Part shown: positions 5,801-48,034 of the stretch, piece after piece | Layout: each line of letters opens with the position of its first letter | How positions within the stretch are numbered: position 1 is the first letter of the stretch | IMG/VR virus record: IMGVR_UViG_3300042566_001512 | Location: 144,808-208,807 of that record | DNA: 64,000 nucleotides | Reading direction: 5' to 3' (one strand) | Notes under the pieces: generated by a model | What the model was told of the DNA's origin: nothing | Databases searched by the model: none | The model's input: only the letters and a program-made list of their open reading frames with translations | Made by a program: the position numbers and the translations under genes

Positions 5801-6154
5801 TTTCAGGCGATAACGGACACGGATTCGCAGTCCACTATAGTGTTTCCTTCTAACTCCACCACAAGAGTAAACGACTTTAGGCTAAGGGGCGAACCCGGTA
5901 AAATTTTGTCACTACAATCCTCGGTATCTGGGCAGCGGGCTACGCTTACATACTCCGGGATATCGAGCGGCCCAATATTGACTAGCTACGCATCTATTAA
6001 AGACATCTCGGTTACTGGGGCGCAGTGGAATTCTCCAGTAAATTACGGATGTGTTGACGCGGGTAATAACGTAGGTTGGAACTTTGGCAACGTTTCTCTT
6101 AAAAGAGATTTCTCGCCGTTTATGGCAGTTCCTATACCTATTGGTGCAAATTAA
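2840..6154 (+). CDS. Gly/Ser/Thr-rich beta-strand-repeat adhesin/tail fibre, C-terminal part
   Basis: 1104 aa; second RYWVGGTGTW...DDVYFDNNS module; repeats continue from the upstream ORF; GGAG 8 nt before ATG. Confidence 0.7.
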   Translation: MKTVTITGVNTFKEISDTNWNSDTLTIVFPNATTNIEKWTVYGSAAYPVTLSRTGSSGSFTLNYTGTSNISSDYINVSNGAGLPSNTWYLGPNSVNGVNTSGFIFTYGAVRYWVGGTGTWDHQSATNWAYQSGGFAGAPAPTNLDDVYFDNNSSSGAFTVTLDSGFVGTGSISGTTLTITAVTKGTLAVGKNIYYNLSNVFAPDADLSNITIQSILTGTGGVGTYRISTSFSNVTSRAIYSDIPRCRDRASPTTNSLSFVGSSPIIISGSIEDSFSVNSAGYSSVIILNSGYNCRLGAAASLARYFLTGSNNRTLISSLSASMVFVYSGGFNTSNLSVTLSNFLSAGGSLTRNIDLTYSEIFLRDVYNYLNIVSSANLTFSSINSTIYLNFYSGHETAGFLTNNLQYGNIIFRPAPAGSSYAIVYFTGNLYCRNLNIESIQGSTNAQVNVCFNSGASSSLPVYVNVSEKFTLRGSSALARKTLVGSCGELSASFNKPSKIYITASQYDIDFVDFRDAEFTNTVISGQSIGNLGNNAGIQFTPPKTVYWKNTSTSYAVWKSASYALTEDGVGSFDNYPLAQDTVIFTDAGIGASASIGFLNPYDGLAGNIDMSRLTKPLTFNWTAFTGGGGYKGIYGDFILSNSVTINSNTPIAFYNRKNSIIDTKGKIANGYFFNSENCTLTIQSPLVTSGAVTLVRGNLSMLADITCDTFSSSAVFLRSVDFGSNFINVTGFNKDVVSSTSSGTGWSCSGTKMFVLQGSPTSGIRNVGGIASSNATQDQVYSFKVAGGSDTVRTINLSRFNSIIFEDEFTGSNGILWNYIFGDLRFSGNMTITPTPSGSAHDLYFVGSKQQNLTTNGVNVPRTCIIAKDTGSNVVLQDDVNFIQHLNNSQKVQLQSGTLNLNGRKLTTVSFSSETSSLKSVNFANGSLVVSGSSFSNTSTALTITGPGTISMTSNAAKTFAGGGYQSYPTLNQGGAGTLTITGANGFQAITDTDSQSTIVFPSNSTTRVNDFRLRGEPGKILSLQSSVSGQRATLTYSGISSGPILTSYASIKDISVTGAQWNSPVNYGCVDAGNNVGWNFGNVSLKRDFSPFMAVPIPIGAN

Positions 6155-32961: not shown

Positions 32962-35900
32962 TTAAGCAGACTTTCGCATAGAAACAGGTGCAGACGGAGG
33001 TTCGTATTTACGACCATCGCTTTTGCTAGTGGGTACATTAGCTGTTTCTTTTGCGGCGCTTACAGTGTTTATCTTATCGTATATCAACTTCATTATGTCC
33101 AGAGTCTCCTTATGTACAATCAGGGATTGTGCCAGTAAAGATTCTGTATTGACCATAATGTCGGCAGTAAGGGTGTTTTTAGCCGCGTTATTATTTTCAG
33201 TAGAGGTACCTGCTACTCTAGGGTTTACTCCCACTGCGTCGTTAAGCGGGGAACTGCTTGCTTGCTTACTTGCCTGTACGGCCTTTTCCTGCTGTGCAAT
33301 AGGCCTGACTTTAGGGTTATATGAGGACTTCGGTCCTTCTATTTGAGAACTGGCCAGTTGTTCGGGCGGTAATCTTGGCGGCTGCTGCGCCGCAGCGGGC
33401 ATTACATAGTCGCCATTTATTTTTGGAGAAGAACTTACAGCGGACACTACTCTTACGAAGTCCTCTCGGGCTCCGCTAGACTTGTTGCTCCCAACTCCAG
33501 CGTAGTAGCTTCTTCCGGTTTTATAAGGTAGGCTGGCCCATTCTTTGCTGATATTGTCAGCAAATTGACCGGCGTCAATTTTTCCCTTTACGTAGTTATC
33601 AAGCCCTCTCATCTTTAATAACCCCACGGCCAACTTGTCCTGGGTCACGGGATTAAAAATGTCAGTTGCTTTTGCGTATCCGGCCTTAATTAGTCCGCTT
33701 AGAGTTTTTCTTATTATTTGATATTTTCCTACCGCAGTAGATTCGTGACCTCTAGCGATCATGTCTTTTTGGTAATCAGATACCTCTGCGATTGACATCT
33801 TTGTCAGGTTAGGTTCGGTTTTCCCGCCCACTAATATATTGTAATTTCCGTTACTTTCTTTTTGACCAATAAATTCCAATAAGGTATTTGTTGCGGGGTC
33901 AAAAGTCTTAACAGGTTCTCTCTTTATGTCGGCAGTCATAAGTCCTGAATCTTTTCTCGACTTCATCACTTGACTGGCTCCGTCGTCGTACTTGGGGTCT
34001 TTATCCTTAGATACGATCGAGGTACCTAGAGTGTTGTTTTGTGCATTGTTGTTTAGGGCCGGAGCGTTATTCGATGCCCTACTTTTATCCACTGCGACTT
34101 CTTTTGAAGTGGAAGCCGTGTCGCTCTTAAGTGGGGTAGAGTCGGCCGGTTTTGTCTTGGCCACATAATCGTGCTGTGTCTTTTCTTTGGCGCGCTCTGC
34201 AAGATACTCCAGGTTACCTTCTACACTAGAAGAATCGGTGTTTACCTGATACCCGGGCCACGGAGAATCAGTTACACTCCAAACTCCATTTATGGAAGAG
34301 ATTGTCTTAGCAACCTGAACAATTTTATTTGGACTTATAATTACAGGCGCTTCAGCTTTAGGCGGCTTTCCCGTTTCTGTTATATGCGCGGTTACGTAGT
34401 TGAGGTAAACTGGCAAGAATCTGTCTCTAAACCACTTACCCCAAGAAACTGCTGCCGGCCCAAATAAATCAGATATACCAAAGTAAACGTTCACCTTCTG
34501 AAGTAATTCGTTGAAATTATCATCAAAAGTAGCTTTGGTACCTTGTATCTTAATTAACTTACTAGTTTCGTTTTCTAGTTTATTTAGAGCTATTACCTTA
34601 GACAGCTCCAGTTCCTTAATACCGTATGTTTTATATCTGATTGCATCAAAAGCAGAAACGGTATTTTTTAATATAGTAGAACCCACAGTGGACGCACCGG
34701 TAACTGCGGTACCTGAGGGCTTTGCTTTTTCATCCGGTTTTCCAAGATCCACTCTAACGGCAGTGTTAGCGGCCTCTTGTGGAGGCTTTACGTCGGTGGG
34801 TAATCCAGTTGCCGTCTTTTTAGCATCGCCAGCTGGGGTAGCGAATTCTTTTAGTGCCGCCTCTATTGCTGCACTTACGTCCGCCGAATCTGAGGCCACG
34901 TACTTGCCTCCCAATATTGGAAGAGTCCCTGTTTTATAAGGACCGCTGGGGAATTTAGTAGCTTCTATGTATTTTAATTTAACGTCCTTCTTTAGGTCAT
35001 TTATTTTAGATAAGTCAATACTGCCATTTAAAATGGACAGCGCACTTACGTGAGTAAGGTAGACGGGTTTAAATCGTTTAATGTACCATGTGCCAAATTG
35101 TCTCTTGTGGTCATTATCCTTAGAAGAAAAACCGAATATTGACATCATCTCCTCAATGTCTATTTTCTTTTCTTCTAACTCCGCTTTTTCCGAACCCACT
35201 TTAACGAATTGTTTTAAATATTCTTCTAGATCTACTATTTTGCTAAAGTAGCTAGTTTCTTCTTTTTTAAAGCCGTATTGAACATAGCGTATGTTATCGA
35301 GCACTGTGGGCTTACTCATCCATCTGCGAACGGCTTTATAGCCCTTATAAGCACCGTAACCGACGGCAGCGGCACCCAGTATACCAAGGGTCACTGGAGA
35401 GCTTACAACGGCCGCTAGACCGGCTCCTAAGGCACCTAGTGCACCGGTAGCAGCCGCGCCCACGCCACCGGCGCCAGCTACCGCGGTAACGGCACTTCCG
35501 GCTAGACCGGCCACTCTTCCAATTCCTAAAAGTTTGCCTAGCCCGCTTAGTACTCCTCCGCCCTTCAATAGAGTTTTAAAGCCGCCCAAGAAACCGGTGA
35601 TGGCGTCAAGAGCACCGGACAATAGGCCGATCAATCCGCCCTTCTTGTCTTTTTCCTTACCAGGCTCAGCCGTTTTAGAGGACTGCTGCTTTGCTCTTTC
35701 TGCGTCTCTTCTGGCTTTTATATCTTCCCATGAACCTTCACGGTCACCGTCACCGTCTCGGTCGCCTTTTACTTTCTTTTCTGCGAAGAAGTCCGTAAAA
35801 GTATTTTTGATGTCACCCAGAAGGGAGACGGTCTGTTCGCCGGTGGTAGCTTCTTTATCTTTTTTATTTTTTATTGAGGAATTTGGCTTTATAGCTTCGC

Positions 35901-38900
35901 TTACGTTGAGCTTTACTCTTCTGCTAAACAACTTGTTTAATTTCTTAAACCCAGAAATTATTTTTGCAGAAGTAGAGGTCTTCAAAGGTTTTCCATTTTG
36001 ACCTAACAAACCTTCGTCTATGTCCTCGTTGCTCAAAACCATGGTTTCTTCTTTCTGGTCCCAAACAGGTCCGTCAATGTCGGAGACCAAAGAAATAATC
36101 TTTCCGGTTTTCTCAGATATGTATCTGCCGGCTTTCATGAGTGCCGCTCTTAGTCTAGGCTCAGGCTCACCCTTTACATATACGTCCTGTGGCTTACTGA
36201 GGTAGCGTATAAAACCACCTGCAACTTTAGCAGTGGCTCCGGCCAAACCCCTGGTTATTAACTTGGTTAACTTCAACCCCTTTTTCATTGTCCAGGCAGC
36301 TGCGGAGGTGAGTTTATTCATTATCCATTTTGCTGGTTTAAATGGATTAAATATGCCAAGCATAGAGTTATAAACACGCAAGTTTGGTAAGTCCTCGTCA
36401 AAGATTTTGACGTTACCTGCGGCGTCAACCACTTCGCCATTTATGTCGTTTTGATGATATATGGGCCTTCCGGTTGACCTGTTAAAGTACTCTCCGTTTC
36501 TTAGCCTGGTTGCGTATAGTCTAGGCTCCGGTTCGTCACCCGCGTATACGTCTTTTACGCTATATGGACCTGTCCCCATCGTAAGTTTTGCTAAATTTAT
36601 GCCAAATTTAGCGCCCTTTGCCAGCATTCTGAAGTTAAACTTTGTAAGCGGTATACCTATTTTGTTATAGTACCAAGAAACTCCGCCTATTACTTTTCCT
36701 GCTAGTTTTAATAATTTCCTAATAGGCGCAAATCGCTTTTGCCTGCTATCGTATACCACGAGGCTGTCTAGTTCTTCTACCGATACAACTGACCTGCCTT
36801 TTTCATCCTTTACCTCGCCTTGGATTTGTTCGGGTAAATAAATAGTCTTTCCAGAAATTGCGTCAGAGTAGTGGCCTTGTTGCATTTTAACTGCTGTCAT
36901 TCTGGGGTATTTTTCACCACCGACCCAAACGTCTTTGGCGCCGCCAAAAGCTACGCTTTTGAACATGTCGACAGTGTCCTTTACACCTGTCCAGGCCCTT
37001 TTTAAAATATCTACTGCTACAGATCCGGCCTTTGTGTTTTTTATATTTTTGGCTATTCCGTCAAATGTACCTTTTGCATAGTCGCCAAATCTTTTATACT
37101 GGCCGTCTTTATCTTTTACGTATGACTGATCAAGTTCATCGGATTTCAGTACGGTTTGTCCGCTTACGATGTCCTTAACGGTTCCGTTTATGTCAGACAA
37201 GGTTTTTACTATTTTTCCAGACGCCAGATCCACGTAGTGTCCCGCCTGTAGTTTAGCTTTTATGATTCTGGGGTTTTCTTCGCCCGAAACTCTCAAATCA
37301 ACCCATTTGTCTTTGAGAGTAAATGAGAGCTTTTGTATTTTGTCCTTTATCTCAGAATACGATTTACCAGAATAACCATCCTGGTTATTTCTTTCTTTAG
37401 AATCGTTTAGTTTGGTGGAAACTTTTCCTAGATAATTTTTAAATTTCCCGTATTGGCCGGATACTCTTTTACCTACATTGGCCTCGCTTATTTTTTGCTT
37501 TTGCTTCTTAAAGAAAAGTTTAGCTTTTGTAAACTGAGTCTTTCCTTTGTTTAATATATCTCCGGCGGGGCCGTTACTGTTTTCTTTGTTTACTTTATCT
37601 TTTTCTTCAAACTTACTGGCTTTGAACAAATCTGTAATTTCTTTGTAATAGCCTATAGAAGTGTCTAGTCTCTGTATAATTTGTTTAAAATAAACTTCAC
37701 AGTCTTGATCTTTCTTAGATAAAGGCGAGTAGTCGGATCTGGTAAATGAAGAAGTACCAACAGAAGAATAATCCGCAGAGGAAAAGGAGCCGACTCTACT
37801 GGAGACTTTGTCTGGCGCAACTGTGGGTTTAGAGATACCGGTTTTTTGCTTACGCACATTAGGCATCCGGCGCTTTTTGCCGATTTGGCCTTTGTAGAAG
37901 TCTTCCATGTCAAGATCATAACCTTCTTCTTTTCTGGTTATAATCCCAAGCTGAACCAGCTCGTTTTGTCTACCTTCCGATATAAGCTGCTCTATGGTAG
38001 CCCTAGGGTCGTTCATGCCTCTTACCAGGGAGTTCATCTGTCTATTGAGCAACAGCATTTCACTGGGCTTACTTTCCAAGTCGGACAAGTACTTACTTGT
38101 CAGTTCCTTTGGTCTTCCCTCCAAGCCCTTTTCCAGCTTAGATGACTGCATTTTATTTTTCAGGAAGGCCTGTTTTATGCTTATTCTTTCTTCCTCACTG
38201 AGTTTGTCCTCTGACTGAGAATCTATTTTATCTATAATTTTATCAAGGATGTCGTTTGTTCTTTTGGCATCATTGTCGTTGTATACTCTTGAGGCTATGC
38301 TCTTGAGTAATTTCGTTTTCCCAGTAAATCTGCCCTTGTCTTGATCGTACTCCACTCTGTCTATGTTTGGATTTCCCGTACGAATAATTTGAATTTCTTG
38401 CAAAATTCTAGACAAATATCCAGGTATAATTTCGTTGATGGATCTTTCGGTTTTCAGTGTAAACGGCTGTACAGCGCTTAAGTCTTTACCCGTGAGTCTA
38501 TTAAAACTACTGTCCACGTTTAGGGACGGCAAGATAGACTGCAGGCCGCGCATGATCCAGGCGCCTATGCCTTCTTTATTCGACCACGAATCGTCCTTCC
38601 TGAAATTTTCCGCGCTCCCTACTATATTTTCATTAAAGTTTTCTAGGTAATCCCCAACCTGCTCCACCTTAGGAAATACCTTTTTGATAGGTTCTTTAAA
38701 GCGCTTAGCAACACTGTAACCTACCGTGTTTGCCAAAAGGTCACCCGCGATCTCGCCACCTGTTTGATAAGTATCAAGCATGCCGGGCGCTACCTGTTCA
38801 CGAGCCATCTCAGCATCAGTAAGTCCAGATCTGAATCCCTGGGCATTTCTTTTTATAGTTTCTATAGTTCTATCTCGTATTTTACGAGTAGTCATTTGTA

Positions 38901-39828
38901 GATATTCGTCTGCGCTGGGCAATAGACCTCTAAAAGCAGTGCCGACAGTATCCGAGAATTTACCGAATAGTTTCTGACTGCTAAGTTCTTTTAGATTTAT
39001 TTTTTGCCAATCAGGAAGACCCGTGTTTTTAATTAACTTATTGTAAGCGTCTACGTGCAGTACGTGGGTTTTATTTACGGTCTCTAGTATGTCGTACTGA
39101 GCGAACAGCTGACGGTGCTGTAACTCAAGAGATTTTTTCTGATATTGTAGATTAATAGTGGTTTGATATTGTGATATCCTGGATAAGGACATCGCGGATT
39201 GATTTAACAGACTAAAGATGTCACGGTGTCTGTTTAGCTCAATACCTTCTTTTATTAGATCTTGACCTTCGTTCTCTATCTTATTATTTTCGGACTGTAC
39301 TATTTGTTCTTTGAATACTTCTGCAAGCTGTATGGATATTGCCGAGTCTCTTTGATCTCTGGCAGACAGGGCGGAACCTAGTTTTTGTTCATCCTTGGCT
39401 TCGTCCTCCCAGCGCTTAAAGATATCCTTTAATCTGCCGGGTATAAATTTACTATCCTTTGGTGCAAGCTTGGAAGCTACTCTTTTAAAGTCCTTTATGG
39501 CCGGCCGTACTTCTGCCGCTGCTTCACTATAGAGCTGCCTTAAATTCGTGGCAACCTTATCCCCCATGTCTAGTGTGTCGCCGTACCCTTTTGGCAGCAA
39601 TTCCCGCAATACACCAGTTATAAAAGAAGGATCGCTTACTTTGGCCTTTATCCCGCTTTTTAATCCGTCTTTAACTTTTGTGGCTGGTTTTCTATCGTCC
39701 TTAAAAGGATCAGCCTGAAAATCTATGTCGTCAAAAACGAGTTCATTATCAAAATCAAAACCGTTATCTAATGTGTTTGCTACTTTCTTACCCTTAGACA
39801 TGATTTTTATCTTTCTGTGAAAAAACAC
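32962..39828 (-). CDS. tape-measure protein / tail-associated lysozyme (phiKZ gp181-like)
   Basis: 2288 aa; Gly/Ala-rich membrane segment; C-terminal lysozyme-like KESNGNYN...AVGKYQII...QDKLA...EWASLP; divergent from vRNAP beta'. Confidence 0.88.
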   Translation of the reverse strand: MFFHRKIKIMSKGKKVANTLDNGFDFDNELVFDDIDFQADPFKDDRKPATKVKDGLKSGIKAKVSDPSFITGVLRELLPKGYGDTLDMGDKVATNLRQLYSEAAAEVRPAIKDFKRVASKLAPKDSKFIPGRLKDIFKRWEDEAKDEQKLGSALSARDQRDSAISIQLAEVFKEQIVQSENNKIENEGQDLIKEGIELNRHRDIFSLLNQSAMSLSRISQYQTTINLQYQKKSLELQHRQLFAQYDILETVNKTHVLHVDAYNKLIKNTGLPDWQKINLKELSSQKLFGKFSDTVGTAFRGLLPSADEYLQMTTRKIRDRTIETIKRNAQGFRSGLTDAEMAREQVAPGMLDTYQTGGEIAGDLLANTVGYSVAKRFKEPIKKVFPKVEQVGDYLENFNENIVGSAENFRKDDSWSNKEGIGAWIMRGLQSILPSLNVDSSFNRLTGKDLSAVQPFTLKTERSINEIIPGYLSRILQEIQIIRTGNPNIDRVEYDQDKGRFTGKTKLLKSIASRVYNDNDAKRTNDILDKIIDKIDSQSEDKLSEEERISIKQAFLKNKMQSSKLEKGLEGRPKELTSKYLSDLESKPSEMLLLNRQMNSLVRGMNDPRATIEQLISEGRQNELVQLGIITRKEEGYDLDMEDFYKGQIGKKRRMPNVRKQKTGISKPTVAPDKVSSRVGSFSSADYSSVGTSSFTRSDYSPLSKKDQDCEVYFKQIIQRLDTSIGYYKEITDLFKASKFEEKDKVNKENSNGPAGDILNKGKTQFTKAKLFFKKQKQKISEANVGKRVSGQYGKFKNYLGKVSTKLNDSKERNNQDGYSGKSYSEIKDKIQKLSFTLKDKWVDLRVSGEENPRIIKAKLQAGHYVDLASGKIVKTLSDINGTVKDIVSGQTVLKSDELDQSYVKDKDGQYKRFGDYAKGTFDGIAKNIKNTKAGSVAVDILKRAWTGVKDTVDMFKSVAFGGAKDVWVGGEKYPRMTAVKMQQGHYSDAISGKTIYLPEQIQGEVKDEKGRSVVSVEELDSLVVYDSRQKRFAPIRKLLKLAGKVIGGVSWYYNKIGIPLTKFNFRMLAKGAKFGINLAKLTMGTGPYSVKDVYAGDEPEPRLYATRLRNGEYFNRSTGRPIYHQNDINGEVVDAAGNVKIFDEDLPNLRVYNSMLGIFNPFKPAKWIMNKLTSAAAWTMKKGLKLTKLITRGLAGATAKVAGGFIRYLSKPQDVYVKGEPEPRLRAALMKAGRYISEKTGKIISLVSDIDGPVWDQKEETMVLSNEDIDEGLLGQNGKPLKTSTSAKIISGFKKLNKLFSRRVKLNVSEAIKPNSSIKNKKDKEATTGEQTVSLLGDIKNTFTDFFAEKKVKGDRDGDGDREGSWEDIKARRDAERAKQQSSKTAEPGKEKDKKGGLIGLLSGALDAITGFLGGFKTLLKGGGVLSGLGKLLGIGRVAGLAGSAVTAVAGAGGVGAAATGALGALGAGLAAVVSSPVTLGILGAAAVGYGAYKGYKAVRRWMSKPTVLDNIRYVQYGFKKEETSYFSKIVDLEEYLKQFVKVGSEKAELEEKKIDIEEMMSIFGFSSKDNDHKRQFGTWYIKRFKPVYLTHVSALSILNGSIDLSKINDLKKDVKLKYIEATKFPSGPYKTGTLPILGGKYVASDSADVSAAIEAALKEFATPAGDAKKTATGLPTDVKPPQEAANTAVRVDLGKPDEKAKPSGTAVTGASTVGSTILKNTVSAFDAIRYKTYGIKELELSKVIALNKLENETSKLIKIQGTKATFDDNFNELLQKVNVYFGISDLFGPAAVSWGKWFRDRFLPVYLNYVTAHITETGKPPKAEAPVIISPNKIVQVAKTISSINGVWSVTDSPWPGYQVNTDSSSVEGNLEYLAERAKEKTQHDYVAKTKPADSTPLKSDTASTSKEVAVDKSRASNNAPALNNNAQNNTLGTSIVSKDKDPKYDDGASQVMKSRKDSGLMTADIKREPVKTFDPATNTLLEFIGQKESNGNYNILVGGKTEPNLTKMSIAEVSDYQKDMIARGHESTAVGKYQIIRKTLSGLIKAGYAKATDIFNPVTQDKLAVGLLKMRGLDNYVKGKIDAGQFADNISKEWASLPYKTGRSYYAGVGSNKSSGAREDFVRVVSAVSSSPKINGDYVMPAAAQQPPRLPPEQLASSQIEGPKSSYNPKVRPIAQQEKAVQASKQASSSPLNDAVGVNPRVAGTSTENNNAAKNTLTADIMVNTESLLAQSLIVHKETLDIMKLIYDKINTVSAAKETANVPTSKSDGRKYEPPSAPVSMRKSA

Positions 39829-39906: not shown

Positions 39907-42334
39907 ATGGATAAACTGGACGTGCCTTTTAACATATTTTTTCTTAGACTAGACGAGCTTACCGTTAAGTACCTCAAGCCCGTGACTTCCCTTGACGTCT
40001 TTGATGGCCTTACTAAAAACCTCCATCCGGATGGATTATATTCGCCATCCATATTCGGCGTGGTTGGAAGTAATAATAGATACACAAAATTCTCCTATAT
40101 AGACATAAAGGTAAAAATAATGCACCCGGTGTATTATAAAGCAATTACCTCTATGAAATCATTATACGAATCCATAATGACCTCAAAAGAGTTTGCGGTC
40201 TGGGACCAGGAAAAAAAGGACTTTGTAAAGTCAAACGCGTTGGCAGGGCAAACCGGTTACGACTTCTTTATACAGCACTGTGATAGCATAGTGCACGAAG
40301 AAAGACCGTCTACCGATAGACAGGAAAACATATCACTTATAAATAAATATAAACAAAATTATTTATACGATAAAATCATCGTACTTCCGGCGGCATATAG
40401 GGACATTGAAATAGATGACAATGGAAGAGAATCCTCAGATGAGATAAATTCGCTTTATTACAAAATCATAGCGATATCAAACACAATAAACATTAACACC
40501 GTAAGAATCTCACCTGAAGCTTACAACACCCAGAGAATGTCCCTGCAAAGAGCATTCAACGACACATACGAGTATCTCTCTAACCTAATTAGAGGAAAGA
40601 GTAATCTCTTTATGGGCAAGTGGGCGTCTCGAAAAATATTTAACGGGACTAGAAACGTAATTACCTCAATGAACGTTACTCAAACTGAGCTAGGAGCACC
40701 CAATTCAATAAACTACAACGACACGCTTGTTGGGCTGTACCAAACTTTAAAAGGCATTTTGCCAGTAACGTTATACAGATTAAAAACTGGGTTTTTATCT
40801 GGAGTATTTCCATCAATAAGCTCACCTGCTCTATTGACTAATAAGACAACGTTAAAATCAGAAAAAGTTGTTTTAAAGACTGCCATATATGACAAGTGGA
40901 TGACCAATGAAGGATTGGAGTCACTTATTAGCTCTTATAAAGAACCATCAATCAGACACGACTATGTCACAGTGGACAACTATTATCTAGGTTTAATTTA
41001 TAGGGGGCCGGATAATACTTTTAAATTGATACACGGAATAGACGAACTTCCTGAGGACAGAGATCCAAAAGACTGCAGGCCTATCAGCTTGACGGAGTTA
41101 TTTTATTGTTCAATCTACGAAATTACGGACAATTACCCAGCACTAGTAACGCGGTATCCAGTAACCGGAGTCGGTAGCATATACCCGTCTATGGCTAAAT
41201 TAAAATCAACGATAGAAGTGGAAAAGAGATATAAGCTAGGGGTAGACTGGACTGTAGATCCACAATCTAAAGTGGCCTACGAATTCCCAACTCAAACTGA
41301 TTTATTCAGTGCTCTGTCTCCCCATCCTTTTAAACTAGGTAGACTTTCAGCTGATGGTTTTAAATGTAAGACTATATAAAACGGTTTTACATTTTAATCA
41401 CGTCCTGTTTTGCAGAAATGCGAAATAAGATTCTTCCTTAATTGCTGGGACATCTTGACACGTTAAAAGCTACAACGTAATGCGAAAGCATAGGCGCGAA
41501 TGCTTGAAAATTTTAACGTAAGACAATCAGCAGCGAAGCTCCTGCTCCCCGCCTAAACGGGAAAGGAGAACGTTCAACGGCCAGCCCTTAAGCAAGGGGT
41601 AGGAGCAAGTGCTCCGAAATGGGAAGCGCCTTACCAGCAATTGCTAGGAAGGTGAAGATATGGTCTTACCTGCATGGAGACATGCAGCGGCTTCTAATGG
41701 AAAGCCGGTAAGCGAGGTAACGTGCGCTTATTGAAAACACGTGTTCGACGGCGATTAAAAGTTATATTAACCCTCAATACCCTCGGGTTAAAACGAGTTA
41801 ATTTATAACACAAAAAGGTTGCCTATTCGCAGTAATGTGAATATAAAAAAATCTCTCTAATTGCTGGGACTCCTCGTTAAACCACTAAGACTACAACGCA
41901 GCGCGAAAGCGCAGACGTGAGAGTTTGAAAACATTAGTGGGTAGAGACAATCAGCAGCTAAGACCCTTACTGCATATAAATTGCAAATGGGTAAAGTTCA
42001 ACGACTAGATCGAAAGATCGTACCGTGTCAAGTGACGCGGGAAACGGGAGACTCCGGTTTTTACCGGATGAAGATATAGTCTTGTCTATGCGGAGACGCG
42101 TAGCTGTGGGATAGCATTTACTTCCCTTTAAAACGAAACAGGTTAACGCCCCTGTTTGAAAACCTAACGACAAGTAGTTGTAACTTCCTCTACTCCGAAG
42201 ATTCTATTAAAGAAATTTATGATTTTTTTAATAACACTCGGTGCTACGTAGGAACTGATGGAAAATTTATTAATAGTTTAGAAATAGATACGGTTAAATA
42301 CGTTTTACATAACCTCACAGGAGAACCACAATAA
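39907..42334 (+). CDS. virion RNA polymerase beta' catalytic subunit (phiKZ gp180-like), spliced: exons 39907-41355, 41744-41755, 42170-42334 (541 aa)
   Basis: HPDGLYSPSIFG, GKWASRKIFNGTRNVI, LVTRYP; splicing restores RLSAD|FDGD|TSSCN containing the DxDGD Mg-binding motif; stop overlaps the beta ATG. Confidence 0.93.
41356..41743 (+). ncRNA. group I intron 1 (388 nt, no ORF)
   Basis: P AATTGCTGGGA 41440, Q AATCAGCAGC 41525, R GTTCAACGGCCA 41572, S AAGATATGGTC 41655; 5' exon ends in U, intron ends in G. Confidence 0.92.
41744..41755 (+). other. 12-nt micro-exon encoding FDGD
   Basis: TTC GAC GGC GAT between two group I cores. Confidence 0.9.
41756..42169 (+). ncRNA. group I intron 2 (414 nt, no ORF)
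   Basis: P AATTGCTGGGA 41859, Q AATCAGCAGC 41949, R GTTCAACGACTA 41996, S AAGATATAGTC 42071; ends ...CCTAACG. Confidence 0.92.
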
Positions 42335-45300
42335 TGAATAATCAACAAGTTTTTTATAAAACATACGGAGTTAGAAACGTAAATGAACTCGCTTCTCCTA
42401 GACTTTTTGATCTAGTAGAATTTGTGTTTCCTTTTAACAGCATAATGCACTATGCGACTTATGACTCCATTGAGAACGGCCCGCCTGGTGACTATCCGCT
42501 GTTTAACCAAATAAAGAAACCGATATACTTTAAGACAATAAACGAAATATCTGCTTTTAATGGCAGCCCAAGGCTGCAGGCCATAAACACGCAGGAACTA
42601 GTTAGGGATTACAGAAATAACAATAGGCGAATGAAGTTACTGCAGGGAGAGGTTCAAAACGTATCGGACCCTACTGTATTAACCGTATTTAATTACTGCA
42701 TATTAAATAAACAATACAAATATGCCCGCAACTTATTTACGGACTATCATCGCTGGAAGAATATATTTACAACAGTTATAGACACTTTAGTAAATAGACT
42801 TTCTAGCCCACAAATAAACCACTATATACCGCTGACTATACCGGATATAATACCTAGCATGATTCAGTTAGATTTGGCCTCCAAAGGGCTTAATCAGTCG
42901 AACCTAAAAGTATTCAAAGACAATAATAGTTTTATGCTTTTAGAGTTATGGAAGTGGCTCAATCCTGCGACTAGTTCTGATAGTCTTTTTAGCAAAATAC
43001 CTATTAACAGAATTCATCTAGTTAATCTGGTTTATATTAAAAGAAACAAGTGGTGCGTTTTAAATTTAGGCGTAATAAATAGCTTTAAGGAAGTCAGTGG
43101 GGACGCCCTTAAACCAGAAAACACACCAATTGTGCTATCTAGGGTGAAGCTCAAATACGTTCAGATACAAAAACGTATACTGAACATGATGATGACCATA
43201 GAGGCCGGATCAGTTGTGGCCGTGGATATTCCCGAGGACATTAAACTGGACGTTCCCGATCAAACGGTAGAAGAACCCGATATCTATTCAGATTACCAAG
43301 AACAAGAGGTAACCACAGAGGCCCCTGTTAAACAAAAGCCTCCTCTTACTGATAAAGAATTACTGGTTCTTCAAGAAAAAGCTAATCAGTTATTATCCGT
43401 AGAAGATGATGACGATCAAGAAATAATAGATCAAAAGATCAAGTTACAAGATCTAGAACTAGACCAAAGACTAGATCAACTTAATGAAATTAACCAAAGA
43501 AAAGAAAATGAATTACAGACAATAGAAAACTCTACTATTTACGACGTTCTTAATGAACAAGAGCCGTCCCTTTATAAATTAGTAGAAAACATGTGCGACA
43601 GGTTAGCAGATAACAACATGCTAACTGCAGCGGAATATAAAAGACTAATTAGGTTGGCCGGTTCCTATAAGACGATAACTTCAAAGGACGGTAAAAGTAC
43701 TCTAGAAGAATACGTCAAAATACCACCAGAAGATCTGGTGGTGCAGGACGTAGTTAACATACCGGATTCTCCGGCAATTGTTGATAAAACGATGCTAAAA
43801 TCTTCTTTGCAGTCATTTACTTCCGACTATGTAAAAAAGGACATAATCGGAAAAGACACTGCATCGATGGTGATCGCGATTCAAAAATCTGGAATGATAG
43901 TCACAGATTACAAGGTGGAAAAATACGAAAGTATTTTAGGTGCGGAAGAAGAGCATACGTTGAGGATTGTACCTGTAGAAGGAATCCCATCGACCATCAG
44001 ATTTAAAGTTCCAGTAGTAAACGAAGACGGTACCTTTGTGGCGTCCGGCGTCAAATATAGACTAAGAAACCAAATAGGGGATTAAGATTTATAAAATATC
44101 GCAGAACATACTTTTGCGATAGTGACAAACAATGTGTTGTCTAAAAGGTCCCCGTGCTGCAGAAACGCCGCACAAGTAAACCTACCTAATTGCGGGAAAA
44201 CGCCATATCTAAATAGCTACCACTTATACCCAGAAACGGAGTATAAATACCTGCGGGGTAATGTTCCAGACAGGCAAGGTAAAAACGCTATTAAGAGGCA
44301 TAACCGACGCAGCAAAGCCCCTAAATGCCAAAAGCGGCACATTGGGGTGGGCTCAGAGGCCATCGAAAGCTATTGCGCCAGCGCATAATAACATTCGTGT
44401 AAAGTCGAATGGTCACTATTAGCATTAGTGATTAAAGCAAGTAGAGTAGGGGCGTTTATTCGCTCCGAAACGGTAGGCACCTAACGGCACTAAACGGCTC
44501 AAGGTGAAGATATGGTCCACATGGATGAGTGCTACCCATCCGCAAAATTGATTACAATAGAGTAAGCCTAACAAGCTACTATGGAAAAACTTTTATAAAC
44601 AGATCTCGAAAGCGAGCAAACGATTACGGCACCTGGATTCAAAACGCGGTGATGGCCAAAGCGCTTAATAAGGAAGACAAAGACATTACCGATTTGTTCA
44701 CGGCAAACGTATTCGATAACACGTTAAAAGCACCAAGAGCTTACACTGGTTTATCCATGTATTTTAAATCTTTTAAGGTAAAAGATTACGTACTGATGCT
44801 AGATCACAAGGTCATAAAGAGCACAGTAAACGATAAAATACTAAAGAAGTACGAAACCGACTCAAGTGTGGTGTGCGGTTATAAAAACTCTGATTTGTTA
44901 GTAATGGATAAAAACAACGCCATTTACAAAATCAAAGATGATCAATTGGAGTTCATATCCAGCATAGAGGATTTCCTTAACATAGACAGCAGCGCTGCTC
45001 CAGTGGAGTATGCCGAAGTAGTCATAGGCGCTAAAGATATACCCGTTGGCGTCGTTCTCAGCTATTACATAGGTTTTACAAAGCTACTTAAGCTTCTTAA
45101 TTTAAACCCAGTCAGAGTAGAGGCTGGAAAACGAGTGAATCTACAACCCAATGAGTTTTCTTTGGTGTTTAGTGACGAGACTCTCGTATTCTCCAGAGAC
45201 GATAGATTATCCTCTTTAATAGTGGGTGGATTCTTGGAGTATCACAAATCCATTAGAGCGTTCAACGTCCACAGCTTTGATAAAAAGGGCGTGTACGTTA

Positions 45301-48034
45301 ATTTGCTGGAGTCTAATAAACTAGGAACCAGATATATACGTGAGATGGATCTAATGCAGCAAATGTTCATAGATCCAATAACTAAAGAGATATTAAAAGA
45401 CATGAAGGAACCAACAACGTTCAACGGTCTTTTAGTTAGAGCATGCGAGCTATTGATGGATGATAAACACCCTCAAGAGTTAGATACGAAGTACATGCGA
45501 ATAAAGGGATACGAAAGAATACCTGGGGCCGTTTATAGGCAACTAGTTGCAGCTATACGCCAGCACAATGCGCAGTTAGGCAAGGCATCCAAGCAAATGA
45601 CACTCGATCCTTACGCAATATGGCGCTACATTACAGAGGATCCGACTAAGGTTCAGATAAGTGAGATTAATCCTATTCAGGCACTTAAAGAAACCGAAGC
45701 CGTAACTTTTTCAGGAACGGGCGGCCGTAGTAGCCGAAGCATGGTAAAAAGCACAAGAGCTTACCACAAAAACTCTATGGGCACTATTAGCGAGTCCACC
45801 GTTGACTCCTCTGATGTAGGTATAAATATCTACACTAGCGCCAATCCGCAATTTAATTCTTTGCGAGGAATATCCAGAGAATTTGATTTTGAGAAACAAG
45901 GTGCCACTAGCTTGCTATCCACCTCCGCAATGCTGGCACCGGCATCCGACAAAGATGATTAATAGTTTATTACAAAAATAAACTAATGGTCCGACAGATC
46001 AGCGATGATCAGTTTGTAATCTCCTTAATTGCTGGGACTCCCTTATAGCCGTTTTACTACAATGATCACGAAAGTGAGTCATGACAGTTAGAAAACAAAA
46101 CGGATTGGGTAATCAGCAGCGAAGCCTCTTTAAAATGAGGAACGTTCAACGACTAAGATCTTATCAATCTGTACCTGCAAAGTGTGGGGAAACGGGAGAC
46201 TGCTCCATCAGGAGCAGAAGATATAGTCTCTTCTGCATTGAGAGATGCAGCTGCGCAAACGCGCGAGTTAGATTAACGAACTAACTGAAGGTAAAGCCAA
46301 AACGAGTAAACTTAAAATGCTCCCTTTGAGAGTAATCTCAATTGAAAAACTTCTCTAATTGACAAGAAGTCCCTTATAGACAATTGACTACAGCGTGACC
46401 GGAAACGGTGAGCGTGAGAGTTTAGGACGATTGTATTGGGTAACTTGCAGCGAAGCTCCTATAAAAACGGAGAACGTTCATCGACTAGACCGTAAGGTCG
46501 TACACTCAAGTGAGTGGAAACGGGAAGCTCCTTTAGAAAAACTAAAGGATGGTGACATAGTCAGTTCTGTAGTGAAAGTTACAGCGGGTCATGTTTGGCC
46601 GGCATCGACGAAAAACTAGTCGATGTGAACATAAAGAAATTTTGTAGCCATACAACAAGGTCACTCCATAGCTTGCGACGGGTACCATCAGCCAACGGTG
46701 AGAACCGGCTACGATCAAGTGGTGGCTCATCGCTCCCATGATCTATTCGCAATAACCGCCACAAAACCAGGAACGGTATTGTCCATCAACAAAAAGGGCA
46801 TAGTGGTAGAATATGCAGATAAAACAAAACAAGGATACGAGCTAGGAAGGCGATTTGGTAATGCGGCAGGTTTGGTAATACCGCACGAAATAGTAACCGA
46901 TCTTAAAGCAGGTCAAGAGTTTGAAATCGGTGAGGCCATTTGCTATAACTCCGGGTTCTTTGAGCCGGATTTCTTTGATCCTAAGAGAATAGTTTTAAAG
47001 AATTCATTCAACGTAAGAACGGTTCTTTGGGAATCGCTGCAGACCTTAGAAGACGCTTCTTCTATTACAGAAAAGACTGCTAATAAACTAGTCACCTCTG
47101 TGACTAAAGTAAAGAACGTTTTGGTTTCGTTCGATCAGACTGTCAGTAATTTAGTAAAGATAGGAGAGAAGGTGGACTACGACACCGTCCTTTGTTATAT
47201 TCAGGACAGTATTACTGCTGGAAATAAACTTTTCACAGACGAAACCATAGACACATTAAAAATGCTAGGTGCCCAATCCCCCAGGGCGCACGTGCAAGGC
47301 GTTGTAGAGGCCATTGAGGTTTACTATCACGGAGAGAAAGAGGACATGTCCGAGTCTCTGCTGGAGCTATGCAACGAAAGCGATAAACGTCTGAAATATG
47401 TGGCAAATAGTCAAGGCAAAAAATTCATGTCGGGAAGCGTGGACTCCGGCTTCCGGATTGAAGCCAATCCTCTTGCTCTAGACTGCGTCGCTATAAGAAT
47501 CTACATTACTACGAAAGCACCCGCTGGAATTGGCGATTAGTTTTTAGTCCTGCTACGATGAAAATCGTAAACAGTTTTCTCCTTAATTGCTGGAAACTCT
47601 TTTATAAAAAAAGACAATCAGCAGCGAAGCCTCATTCCCAAAAAAATGAGGAACGTTCAACGACTATCCCGTAGCTGGGAGTAGGGTCATGTGGCCCCAA
47701 ACAGGAGATATCTTCGGGTCTTAACTGGCCAAAGATAAAGATATAGTCTAGTCTATGCGGTGACGCGTAGCTGCGAAATATAAAAAGTCGCAGGATTGGG
47801 TCTAACGAACCCAATCTAATAAAAACGAAAGGCGTGTTTGCTAACCAGATGAAGACAGTTTTTAGTGAAACTATAAAGCAGAGTTACAAAACTGAAGACG
47901 GAAAAGAAATAGACGCGGTTTTTGGTGCAAAGAGTATCGACGACCGTATCGTTAACTCCGCAGTTATAATTGGCACGGCCAATGCCACTCTTGACATTAT
48001 TACTGATAAAGCAGTAGAGATGTATTTTTCTTAA
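42334..48034 (+). CDS. virion RNA polymerase beta subunit (phiKZ gp178-like), spliced: exons 42334-44082, 44532-45959, 46297-46307, 46637-47537, 47828-48034 (1431 aa)
   Basis: Splicing restores IGD|LPIRKI, KDD|PKRV|NFVAIQQGHS and GIGD|KGVFANQMK; exon sum 4296 nt = 1432 codons; AGGAG SD. Confidence 0.92.
44083..44531 (+). ncRNA. group I intron 3 (449 nt, divergent core)
   Basis: P AATTGCGGGAAA 44188, Q-like AACCGACGCAGC 44302, R GCTCAGAGGCCA 44351, S AAGATATGGTC 44507; P3 CCTACC/GGTAGG. Confidence 0.85.
45960..46296 (+). ncRNA. group I intron 4 (337 nt, no ORF)
   Basis: P 46027, Q AATCAGCAGC 46111, R GTTCAACGACTA 46144, S AAGATATAGTC 46218; ends ...GTAAAG. Confidence 0.92.
46297..46307 (+). 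other. 11-nt micro-exon (CCA AAA CGA GT, PKRV)
   Basis: Needed to rebuild DDPKRVNF in frame; ends in U and is preceded by G. Confidence 0.85.
46308..46636 (+). ncRNA. group I intron 5 (329 nt, no ORF)
   Basis: P AATTGACAAGAA 46357 covaries with Q AACTTGCAGC 46442; R GTTCATCGACTA 46476; S GTGACATAGTC 46552; ends ...ATAAAG. Confidence 0.88.
47538..47827 (+). ncRNA. group I intron 6 (290 nt, no ORF)
   Basis: P AATTGCTGGAAA 47585, Q 47616, R GTTCAACGACTA 47655, S AAGATATAGTC 47738; splits GD|K. Confidence 0.92.

What the first reader, a model, noticed from the sequence alone, without database searches (positions are those of the whole stretch)
41350..47835. Endonuclease-free introns sit at conserved catalytic codons and may shield homing-endonuclease target sites
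Seen: five of six introns insert right after a GAT (Asp) codon, in D|FDGD, DFDGD|, GD|LP, DD|PK and GD|K, and none has room for an HNH, GIY-YIG or LAGLIDADG ORF. Known: in nucleus-forming Pseudomonas jumbo phages an intron-encoded HNH nuclease (phiPA3 gp210) cuts the conserved vRNAP beta' gene of a co-infecting relative (phiKZ). Inference: empty introns that break up these conserved DNA stretches could give immunity to competitors' homing endonucleases, or be mobilised in trans by an endonuclease elsewhere in the genome.
Basis: inference. Interest (0 to 1): 0.68.

Follow-up and report, generated by a model that had tools for sequence, protein, structure and literature searches.

The report
Six endonuclease-free introns in phage RNA polymerase
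[quoted passage not shown] At five of the six sites, related phages carry endonuclease-bearing mobile introns at exactly the same position, so this is an unusually dense but mechanistically familiar case of the intron homing cycle.

Summary
Window 39907-48034 (+) encodes the virion RNA polymerase beta'-N and beta genes of a phiKZ-like jumbo phage, split by six group I introns of 290-449 nt. Each follows a U and ends in G. Five follow a GAT codon; chance gives P about 2e-6. None has an endonuclease ORF.

Two micro-exons result, of 12 nt (FDGD) and 11 nt.

In 80 related metagenomic phage loci plus phiPA3, every one of these sites recurs. Five of the six also occur with 1.1-2.3 kb introns carrying HNH_3/NUMOD1 or DUF723-type nuclease ORFs. 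Introns 1, 3, 4 and 6 are most similar to same-site introns in relatives, and for introns 3, 4 and 6 these include ORF-bearing ones.

Best reading: these are endonuclease-free stages of mobile intron lineages at recurrent homing sites. Immunity to the cognate nucleases is a plausible by-product, neither shown nor excluded as a selected function. I-HmuI-type HNH nickases are reported to cut intron-plus alleles.

A free-standing homolog of the site-3 intron nuclease lies 89 kb away in the same genome. It is a weak candidate for mobilisation in trans.

No RNA evidence of splicing was found.

The parts
39907..41355 (+). vRNAP beta'-N gene, exon 1 (ends ...RLSAD, GAT)
   Evidence: ORF. phrog_2986 E 3.5e-171, profile positions 2-484. 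46% identity to RP12 ORF042 residues 1-484. Syntenic with phiPA3 gp212.
41356..41743 (+). Intron I1 (388 nt), group I, inserted at D|FDGD
   Evidence: RF00028, 83.6 bits. Follows T and ends in G. P1 U.G pair possible. Best match among relatives' introns is a same-site intron, L064.
41744..41755 (+). 12-nt micro-exon encoding FDGD of the Mg-binding NADFDGD motif
   Evidence: Read from the sequence. The spliced frame reads ...SADFDGDTSS, against RP12 ...GADFDGDTAS. The same architecture occurs at L012:5200-5211.
41756..42169 (+). Intron I2 (414 nt), group I, inserted at DFDGD|T
   Evidence: RF00028, 88.8 bits. Starts with an in-frame TAA and ends in G. P1 pairs GGCGAU with the guide sequence.
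42170..42334 (+). vRNAP beta'-N gene, exon 3 (TSSCNFLYS...GEPQ, stop)
   Evidence: 51% identity to RP12 ORF042 residues 489-541. Sequence. Its stop overlaps the ATG of the next gene (TAATG).
42334..44082 (+). vRNAP beta gene, exon 1 (ends ...NQIGD, GAT)
   Evidence: phrog_3148 positions 4-574, E 5e-117. tblastn to 'RNA polymerase beta subunit' genes of jumbo phages.
44083..44531 (+). Intron I3 (449 nt), group I, inserted at GD|LP
   Evidence: RF00028, 47.2 bits, below the threshold of 50. An alignment with nine same-site introns of relatives gives 54 of 86 predicted pairs with compensatory changes. Best matches are all same-site introns, including the ORF-bearing L017 (213 bits).
44532..45959 (+). 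vRNAP beta gene, exon 2 (LPIRK...SDKDD, GAT)
   Evidence: phrog_3148 positions 575-1050, E 4e-193. 50.6% identity to RP12 ORF041.
45960..46296 (+). Intron I4 (337 nt), group I, inserted at DD|PK, the phiPA3 gp210 homing site
   Evidence: RF00028, 86.7 bits. phiPA3 gp211 ends its exon at ...NDD and gp209 starts MKRV. The paper places the gp210 intron after the two conserved Asp. Best matches are same-site introns, including ORF-bearing ones and phiPA3.
46297..46307 (+). 11-nt micro-exon (PKR and the first two bases of Val)
   Evidence: Read from the sequence. The spliced frame reads DDPKRVNFVAIQQ, against RP12 DDPKRVNFIGIQ. It fills PHROG profile positions 1051-1054.
46308..46636 (+). Intron I5 (329 nt), group I, phase-2 insertion at PKRV|N
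   Evidence: RF00028, 77.5 bits. Follows T and ends in G. The same position is occupied in L062, L067, L070 and L082, but there is no clear sequence similarity to those introns.
46637..47537 (+). vRNAP beta gene, exon 4 (ends ...AGIGD, GAT)
   Evidence: phrog_3148 positions 1055-1354, E 2e-119.
47538..47827 (+). Intron I6 (290 nt), group I, inserted at GD|K
   Evidence: RF00028, 101.7 bits. Starts with an in-frame TAG and ends in G. Best match is the ORF-bearing same-site intron of L015 (146 bits).
47828..48034 (+). vRNAP beta gene, exon 5 (KGVFANQMK... stop)
   Evidence: phrog_3148 positions 1355-1420. 48% identity to RP12 ORF041 residues 1415-1480.

Best explanation
[quoted passage not shown] They are the endonuclease-free state of mobile intron lineages that circulate among these phages.

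Each sits at a recurrent homing site. Such a site is a short stretch of DNA kept invariant because it encodes an invariant Asp-containing motif.

The 'after GAT' rule follows from two constraints. Homing nucleases and introns persist where the DNA cannot drift and sloppy deletion is lethal. The ribozyme also needs a U as the last exon base, which for Asp means GAT and not GAC.

The introns are transcribed with the gene and removed by the ribozyme, restoring the reading frame across two micro-exons of 12 and 11 nt. Lacking a nuclease gene, they cannot home on their own. As a side effect they split the recognition sequence of nucleases that home to the same positions.

Shown here: the intron identity, the junctions, the recurrence of the sites, the presence of nuclease ORFs in relatives' introns, and the same-site intron homology. 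Inferred: actual splicing, the direction of change (ORF loss or ORF not yet gained), and any immunity.
For: Intron identity and junctions.

Host genes.

Site recurrence. tblastn of the intron-less RP12 proteins on 80 IMG/VR loci found insertions at the same codons:
- D|FDGD in 8 loci
- GD|xP in 9
- DD|PK in 14, plus phiPA3
- PKRV|N in 4
- GD|K in 4
- DFDGD| in 1
Rfam confirmed group I cores in 14 of these insertions.

Nuclease ORFs in the long versions: HNH_3/NUMOD1 at D|FDGD, DD|PK, PKRV|N and GD|K; DUF723/CapR/DUF4379 (phrog_559) at GD|xP.

Same-site homology: the best blastn matches of I1, I3, I4 and I6 are introns at the same site, and for I3, I4 and I6 these include ORF-bearing ones. The site-3 family, with and without ORF, shares one covarying structure.

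I4 sits at the experimentally defined phiPA3 gp210 site.

GAT requirement: every occupied allele has GAT at the splice site. Unoccupied alleles use GAC in 67 of 70 cases at the first Asp of DFDGD, and GAC in roughly 40-60% of Asp codons at the other sites.

All three states (empty, ORF-bearing, ORF-less) coexist among relatives, as the homing cycle predicts. No insertion was detected in 52 of 80 loci.
Against: No RNA data: no listed run is on record as RNA, and the one possible RNA run gave no joint at a predicted junction, so splicing is inferred only.

I3 scores just under the Rfam threshold.

For I2 (DFDGD|) no ORF-bearing counterpart was found. I5 shares its site but not recognisable sequence with the other introns there. 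For these two, 'derived from a mobile intron' is weaker.

The closest relative is only 62% identical in protein, so neither recent gain or loss nor the direction of change can be read.

The survey of relatives is not exhaustive. The twin introns of L081 were missed by my chaining and turned up only with Rfam.
Confidence: 0.8

Rival explanations
1. Adaptive shield. The ORF-less introns are retained by selection because they protect essential vRNAP genes from homing nucleases of co-infecting relatives. A second intron 11-12 nt downstream would also break the exon-2 half-site used by HNH nickases. This does not exclude the best explanation; it adds a selected function.
For: - Five of six sites are real nuclease-associated sites in relatives.
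- A nuclease at the I4 site is lethal to a competitor, and the authors note that acquiring the intron would protect phiKZ.
- Intron insertion makes alleles immune to the cognate nuclease in general, and I-PfoP3I does not cut intron-plus DNA.
- The window carries more introns in these genes (6) than any of 80 relatives, where the next have 4.
- Twin introns recur in L008, L012 and L081.
Against: - No cleavage data.
- The same distribution is expected from neutral homing-cycle dynamics.
- I-HmuI and I-HmuII, which are HNH nickases like the HNH_3 ORFs found here, are reported to cut intron-plus alleles.
- 52 of 80 relatives show no intron in these genes.
- Silent GAT-to-GAC change or target mutation is a cheaper escape; phiKZ escapers were point mutants.
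Confidence: 0.3
2. Collaborative (trans) homing. The free-standing nuclease ORF at genome position 99178-100404 (outside the window) cuts intron-less GD|LP sites of relatives and so mobilises the ORF-less I3.
For: - The ORF is 33-38% identical to the five nucleases encoded inside site-3 introns of relatives. That is as close as most of them are to each other (36-44%; one pair is 65%). The C-terminal nuclease block is intact.
- It belongs to the same PHROG families (phrog_559, phrog_9084) and has the DUF723 domain.
- No intron lies around it.
- Trans homing of ORF-less or defunct introns is documented in T4 and cyanophages.
Against: - It lies 89 kb from I3. In the reviewed case (S-PM2 F-CphI beside psbA) the nuclease gene is adjacent to its target, and from my own knowledge the same holds for T4 mobE and nrdB. 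Adjacency is what lets the nuclease gene spread with the intron.
- phrog_559 is a large family, presumably with many specificities.
- No homolog was found in the contigs of four relatives with ORF-less site-3 introns, though those contigs are only 10-55% complete.
- The other five introns have no candidate. The contig, 76% complete, has no NUMOD1, GIY-YIG, LAGLIDADG or classic HNH match and only one other HNH ORF, next to a tRNA intron.
Confidence: 0.15
3. Spread independent of any nuclease. Introns whose guide sequence pairs with ...GAU colonise new GAU sites by reverse splicing or local duplication. This would explain the GAT rule and the tightly stacked twins without a nuclease at every site.
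For: - The twin introns of L081, 6 nt apart and both after GAT, are clear paralogs with long identical peripheral segments.
- Within the window, each twin partner is the other's most similar intron in the genome (I1-I2 and I4-I5, 66% each).
- Four different insertion points occur within the 15 nt that encode DFDGD.
- I2's site has no ORF-bearing counterpart.
Against: - Five of six sites do have nuclease-bearing introns, and I3, I4 and I6 are homologous to them.
- The within-window similarities are weak (66% against 50-61% for other pairs).
- From my own knowledge, reverse splicing into DNA-encoded mRNA sites followed by fixation has not been shown in phages.
Confidence: 0.2
4. Artefact or decay. 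The interruptions are assembly errors, or the genes are pseudogenes broken by dead insertions.
For: No RNA evidence of splicing.
Against: - Contigs from other metagenomes of separate studies cross the junctions, X2 with no differences over I1-I2 and X3 and X4 with none at several others.
- All exon frames are intact and contiguous on the family profile.
- The ribozyme cores score 77-102 bits, and the site-3 family covaries.
- The interrupted genes are among those conserved across phiKZ-like jumbo phages: exon 2 of beta matched 306 phage records.
Confidence: 0.02

Closest known systems
phiPA3 gp210 intron in the vRNAP beta gene (gp211/gp209); Birkholz et al. 2024, PMC11620839
   Same: Same gene and same codon boundary, after the two conserved Asp (E. 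coli RpoB D675 equivalent)...DD|(P/M)KRV. Same kind of ribozyme, with recognisable sequence similarity to I4 (83 bits). Same type of phage and same gene order.
   Different: The phiPA3 intron is about 1.35 kb and encodes the HNH nickase gp210. I4 is 337 nt with no ORF. The window has five further introns in the same gene pair, one of them only 11 nt downstream of I4.
Collaborative or trans homing: T4 mobE with the nrdB intron (PMC2790892); cyanophage S-PM2 F-CphI with the ORF-less psbA intron (reviewed in PMC3984707)
   Same: [quoted passage not shown]
   Different: In the S-PM2 case the nuclease gene is next to its target, and from my own knowledge so is T4 mobE. Here it is 89 kb away. Its target is unknown, and only one of the six introns has such a candidate.
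Staphylococcus phage Twort: many group I introns, and one gene with three (Landthaler and Shub 1999, cited in PMC11620839)
   Same: [quoted passage not shown] This contig has 9, from ten Rfam hits.
   Different: Here there are six introns in two adjacent genes, making 27% of the 8.1-kb locus. Two exons are only 11-12 nt long and lie inside catalytic motifs. I found no phage precedent for such micro-exons in the searchable literature.
SPO1/SP82 DNA-polymerase introns with the HNH nickases I-HmuI and I-HmuII
   Same: Related phages carry similar introns at one conserved site with divergent HNH ORFs. The ORFs found at four of the sites in relatives are of the HNH type (HNH_3), with NUMOD1 or I-HmuI-like NUMOD modules in several.
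   Different: Those introns encode their nuclease. They also show that intron occupancy need not protect, since the nucleases cut intron-plus DNA.

Membership tests
Group I self-splicing intron (Rfam RF00028) | Match to the covariance model at or above the curated gathering score | tested here: met
   I1, I2, I4, I5 and I6 score 77.5-101.7 bits against a threshold of 50. I3 scores 47.2 bits, just below, but see the next row.
Group I self-splicing intron (Rfam RF00028) | Conserved secondary structure supported by covariation (checked for I3, the sub-threshold case) | tested here: met
   In ten same-site introns, 54 of 86 predicted pairs show compensatory changes, with a covariation term of -16.7 kcal/mol.
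Group I self-splicing intron (Rfam RF00028) | U as the last 5'-exon base, paired with G in P1, and G as the last intron base | tested here: met
   All six introns.
Group I self-splicing intron (Rfam RF00028) | Removal restores an intact, homologous reading frame | tested here: met
   Frames are open. Exons map to contiguous profile positions. Junction residues match RP12.
Group I self-splicing intron (Rfam RF00028) | Autocatalytic splicing, or spliced RNA in vivo | not testable with these tools
   No RNA run holds the locus, and no joint was found at a predicted junction.
Mobile group I intron (intron plus encoded homing endonuclease) | A homing-endonuclease ORF inside the intron | tested here: not met
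   The longest internal ORFs are 88, 74 and 67 aa, with no Pfam or PHROG hit. Relatives' nucleases give no tblastn match inside the introns.
Mobile group I intron (intron plus encoded homing endonuclease) | Insertion at a site used by endonuclease-bearing introns in related genomes | tested here: met
   Five of six sites. I4 equals the phiPA3 gp210 site. Not met for I2.
Collaborative homing pair (ORF-less intron plus free-standing nuclease) | A free-standing homing-nuclease gene in the same genome, related to nucleases specific for the intron's site | tested here: met
   Genome 99178-100404 (L087:4179-5405) is 33-38% identical to the site-3 intron nucleases, with phrog_559 E 8e-64. No intron lies nearby.
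Collaborative homing pair (ORF-less intron plus free-standing nuclease) | The nuclease gene is adjacent to the intron-bearing target gene, as for S-PM2 F-CphI and psbA | tested here: not met
   It lies 89 kb from I3.
Collaborative homing pair (ORF-less intron plus free-standing nuclease) | The nuclease cleaves the intron-less insertion site | not testable with these tools
   Needs a cleavage assay.
   The literature supports both outcomes: immunity and cutting of intron-plus DNA by I-HmuI and I-HmuII.

The most novel reading that the evidence does not exclude
In nucleus-forming jumbo phages the DNA encoding the invariant RNA-polymerase motifs is an intron-stacking battleground. These motifs are DFDGD in beta', and DD-PKRV and GDK in beta.

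Across relatives, four different insertion points lie within the 15 nt that encode DFDGD. Twin introns leave micro-exons of only 6, 9, 11 or 12 nt.

The second intron of a pair may act as a 'double lock'. It would destroy the downstream half-site that lets I-HmuI-type nickases cut alleles already carrying one intron. On this reading the ORF-less introns are kept as defence against competitors' intron nucleases.

The separation of transcription (inside the phage nucleus) from translation may be what lets these phages tolerate such intron loads.
Probability: 0.15. Interest if true: 0.8.

Novelty: new member of a known kind. Interest (0 to 1): 0.5.

Why it matters
The 2024 phiPA3/phiKZ work showed that one intron nuclease in the virion RNA-polymerase beta gene can decide competition between co-infecting jumbo phages.

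This locus and its 80 relatives show that the phiPA3 site is one of at least seven recurrent intron sites in the vRNAP beta'/beta gene pair. Five of the window's six sites occur in empty, ORF-less and nuclease-bearing states.

That gives a ready-made natural panel for three questions:
- whether intron occupancy protects against intron nucleases;
- whether ORF-less introns are mobilised in trans;
- how two ribozymes splice around a 6-12-nt exon that encodes the catalytic Mg-binding residues.

Practically, these genes will be mis-annotated as 4-7 fragments in jumbo-phage genomes unless introns are modelled.

Tried and rejected
- Megablast of the 8.2-kb locus against 50,697 phage records: no match.
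- The search for related loci with a single exon protein: nothing. An alignment of four homologs was needed.
- Pfam on the exons: no family. PDB sequence search with two exons: nothing. Gene identity therefore rests on PHROGs, on annotated homologs and on synteny with phiPA3.
- RNA evidence: no listed run is on record as RNA. In X8, the one possible RNA run, the matches over the introns are fragments of other organisms' intron cores at low identity, and only two short exon pieces match exactly. All listed joints are cross-matches between intron cores, none at a predicted junction. This neither supports nor contradicts splicing.
- No intron-less allele of this phage was seen in contigs of X2, X3 or X4. 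Contigs drop rare variants, so this is not evidence that none exists.
- Test of co-occurrence between the free-standing DUF723-type nuclease and ORF-less site-3 introns in five relatives' contigs: no hit, but those contigs are only 10-55% complete, so it is inconclusive.
- Searches of the contig for HNH (PF01844), GIY-YIG, NUMOD1 and LAGLIDADG_3: none. HNH_3: one weak hit, which turned out to be the ORF beside a tRNA intron.
- Resolving the split tRNA-like genes around that ORF by trial excision with ARAGORN gave many equally acceptable solutions, so I left it unresolved.
- A simple motif count for intron cores is less sensitive than Rfam and I used it only as a cross-check.
The joined frames were assembled only inside a script, to check frame and junction residues.

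Full report
WHAT IS THERE

Window 39907-48034 (+) holds two adjacent genes. Exon by exon, they belong to the PHROG families 'RNA polymerase beta subunit': phrog_2986 for the first gene and phrog_3148 for the second. Their best annotated relatives are Ralstonia phage RP12 ORF042/ORF041 and Burkholderia phage FLC9, at about 50% protein identity.

Gene order matches phiPA3. A huge virion lysin-like gene sits on the opposite strand, followed by gp212 (similar to phiKZ gp180) and gp211/gp209 (similar to phiKZ gp178). So these are the beta'-N and beta subunits of the virion-packaged RNA polymerase of a phiKZ-like jumbo phage.

The window is the last 64 kb of a 208,807-bp IMG/VR contig estimated at 76% complete. 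Near-identical DNA occurs in lake, freshwater, wastewater and animal-faeces metagenomes.

THE INTRONS

Rfam finds five group I introns above threshold and a sixth at 47.2 bits. I fixed the junctions by reading the DNA against the intron-less RP12 proteins:

| Intron | Coordinates | Length (nt) | Junction |
|---|---|---|---|
| I1 | 41356-41743 | 388 | D\|FDGD |
| I2 | 41756-42169 | 414 | DFDGD\|T |
| I3 | 44083-44531 | 449 | GD\|LP |
| I4 | 45960-46296 | 337 | DD\|PK |
| I5 | 46308-46636 | 329 | PKRV\|N (after GT of the Val codon) |
| I6 | 47538-47827 | 290 | GD\|K |

- Every intron follows a T and ends in G, and four begin with an in-frame TAA or TAG.
- In each, the last exon U can pair with a G in a P1 helix.
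- Excision gives open frames.
- The exons map to contiguous positions of the family profile: 574|575, 1050|1055 with the 11-nt micro-exon filling 1051-1054, and 1354|1355.
- Two exons are tiny: 41744-41755 (12 nt, FDGD) and 46297-46307 (11 nt).
- Introns make up 2207 of 8128 nt of the locus.
- I3, the sub-threshold case, belongs to a site-specific family of ten introns with strong covariation: 54 of 86 pairs have compensatory changes.
- Contigs from three other metagenomes cross the junctions: X2 spans I1-I2 with no differences, and X3 and X4 cross several junctions with none.

The joined frame was checked only in a script.

THE GAT RULE

Five of six introns follow GAT. Chance expectation is 5% per T position, giving P = 1.8e-6.

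Across relatives, all occupied alleles have GAT at the junction. Unoccupied alleles use GAC as well:
- at the first Asp of DFDGD, occupied alleles are 9/9 GAT and unoccupied alleles 3/70;
- at the other sites, unoccupied alleles are roughly 40-60% GAT.

These counts are not corrected for relatedness. The simplest reading combines two constraints: group I splicing needs a U at that position, and the sites are invariant Asp codons.

NO NUCLEASE INSIDE

The longest ORFs within the introns (88, 74, 67 and 30 aa) match no Pfam family, and the three longest no PHROG family. Nucleases from relatives' introns find nothing there.

THE SITES ARE HOMING SITES

[quoted passage not shown] In phiPA3 the exon ends ...NDD and resumes MKRV. 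That is exactly the I4 position (KDD|PKRV).

I then fetched 80 related loci from IMG/VR and mapped insertions with the RP12 proteins.

| Site (window intron) | ORF-bearing in relatives | ORF-less in relatives |
|---|---|---|
| D\|FDGD (I1) | L008, L062, L041 | L064, L068, L082, L012, L081 |
| GD\|xP (I3) | L017, L063, L066, L074, L076 | L009, L010, L012, L041 |
| DD\|PK (I4) | L012, L014, L024, L036, L039, L075, L081, phiPA3 | six loci; L073 is long but has no intact ORF |
| PKRV\|N (I5) | L070 | L062, L067, L082 |
| GD\|K (I6) | L015, L081 | L025, L026 |
| DFDGD\| (I2) | none found | L012 |

The ORFs are HNH_3/NUMOD1 nucleases, except at GD|xP, where they are DUF723/CapR/DUF4379 proteins of phrog_559. 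Rfam confirmed group I cores in 14 of these insertions.

By blastn, the best matches of I1, I3, I4 and I6 are introns at the same site, and for I3, I4 and I6 these include ORF-bearing ones. I2 and I5 show no such site-specific similarity.

The window has more introns in this gene pair (6) than any relative; L012 and L081 have 4. No insertion was detected in 52 of 80 loci, though detection was not exhaustive.

NUCLEASES ELSEWHERE IN THE GENOME

The contig has nine group I introns, from ten Rfam hits (two hits are the halves of one intron). It has no classic HNH, GIY-YIG, NUMOD1 or LAGLIDADG_3 match. Two nuclease ORFs exist.

1. An HNH ORF (phrog_14913) sits beside a group I intron in a tRNA cluster.
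2. A free-standing 408-aa ORF at genome 99178-100404 is 33-38% identical to the site-3 intron nucleases. That is about as close as most of those are to one another, and its C-terminal nuclease block is intact. No intron surrounds it.

The second ORF is a concrete candidate for trans mobilisation of I3. It lies 89 kb away from I3, unlike the adjacent arrangement of the reviewed cyanophage case. I found no homolog in five incomplete relatives' contigs.

INTERPRETATION

The data fit the homing cycle. Intron lineages tied to particular invariant sites alternate between nuclease-bearing and nuclease-free states, with empty sites common. ORF-less introns persist because only exact deletion keeps an essential catalytic motif intact.

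Immunity to cognate nucleases follows from splitting the target, and the phiPA3 authors imply it. Whether it is selected for is untested, and I-HmuI-type nickases are reported to cut intron-plus DNA.

Two observations go beyond the textbook picture:
- Insertion points stack within DFDGD. They fall after D1, after D2 (L081, 6-nt micro-exon 5731-5736), after G (L008, 9-nt micro-exon; also this phage's own non-virion beta' gene), and after D3 (the window and L012).
- The L081 twin introns are clearly paralogous. This hints at local spread that may not need a nuclease.

COMPARISON AND NOVELTY

The closest known case is the phiPA3 gp210 intron: same gene, same site, but with a nuclease. ORF-less introns, trans homing and multi-intron phage genes (Twort) are all known.

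I found no paper describing introns in the DFDGD motif of phage polymerases or phage micro-exons of this size. Only two papers in the library mention group I introns together with Chimalliviridae.

I rate it a new member of a known kind, of moderate interest as a natural test panel.

Noticed in passing
L004:3658-4382 (genome 17657-18381, outside the window): The non-virion RNA polymerase beta' gene (phrog_2987) of the same phage is split at NADFDG|DQM by a 725-nt group I intron. The intron carries a 116-aa ORF (L004:3847-4197) with no Pfam or PHROG family. This is a third insertion point in the same catalytic motif, in the paralogous polymerase.
   Followed up: partly
L087:4179-5405 (genome 99178-100404): Free-standing 408-aa nuclease-like ORF (DUF723 repeats plus a conserved C-terminal block; phrog_559). 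It is 33-38% identical to nucleases encoded inside GD|xP introns of relatives. No intron lies around it.
   Followed up: partly
L006:2570-3635 (genome ~86570-87635): An HNH ORF (L006:2676-3227, phrog_14913) is followed by a group I core (L006:3261-3473, 51.3 bits), among what look like two nested, split tRNA-like genes with long variable arms. ARAGORN sees them only after trial excision, and the true exon structure is unresolved.
   Followed up: partly
L005:2486-2849, minus strand (genome ~46485-46848): Another group I intron (72 bits) splits what may be a DNA-polymerase gene (function judged from the sequence by eye, not tested); the split lies just upstream of a ...DLDVAGSYPN... segment.
   Followed up: no
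L081:5320-6065: Twin paralogous ORF-less introns (5320-5730 and 5737-6065) flank a 6-nt micro-exon, TTCGAT (5731-5736), encoding the F and D of DFDGD. They share long identical peripheral segments, suggesting local duplication into the neighbouring GAT site. L008 has a 9-nt micro-exon (5720-5728) and L012 a 12-nt one (5200-5211).
   Followed up: partly
window 41353-41355 and the homologous codon in 80 loci: At the first Asp of DFDGD, intron-occupied alleles use GAT in 9 of 9 cases and unoccupied alleles use GAC in 67 of 70. Other intron-site Asp codons are about 50:50 when unoccupied. This could be a silent barrier to intron establishment or shared ancestry; it was not phylogenetically corrected.
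   Followed up: partly
window 41756, 44083, 45960, 47538: Four of the six introns begin with an in-frame stop (TAA or TAG) directly after the GAT. Most same-site introns of relatives also begin gat|taa. This would stop ribosomes at the exon edge of unspliced RNA.
   Followed up: no
window 46100-46700 and 41500-41700: In the laid metagenome runs, depth over intron-core segments is 10-100 times that of the exons, and it comes from low-identity contigs. Similar group I cores from other organisms are therefore abundant in the same wastewater and freshwater samples.
   Followed up: no
window 32962-39828 (-): A 2288-aa ORF lies divergently upstream of the polymerase genes, in the position of phiPA3 gp213 (annotated tail fibre protein, with a note of similarity to a putative endolysin of phiKZ). 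Its sequence looked to me like a virion protein with a lysozyme-like domain, but no family search was run on it.
   Followed up: no
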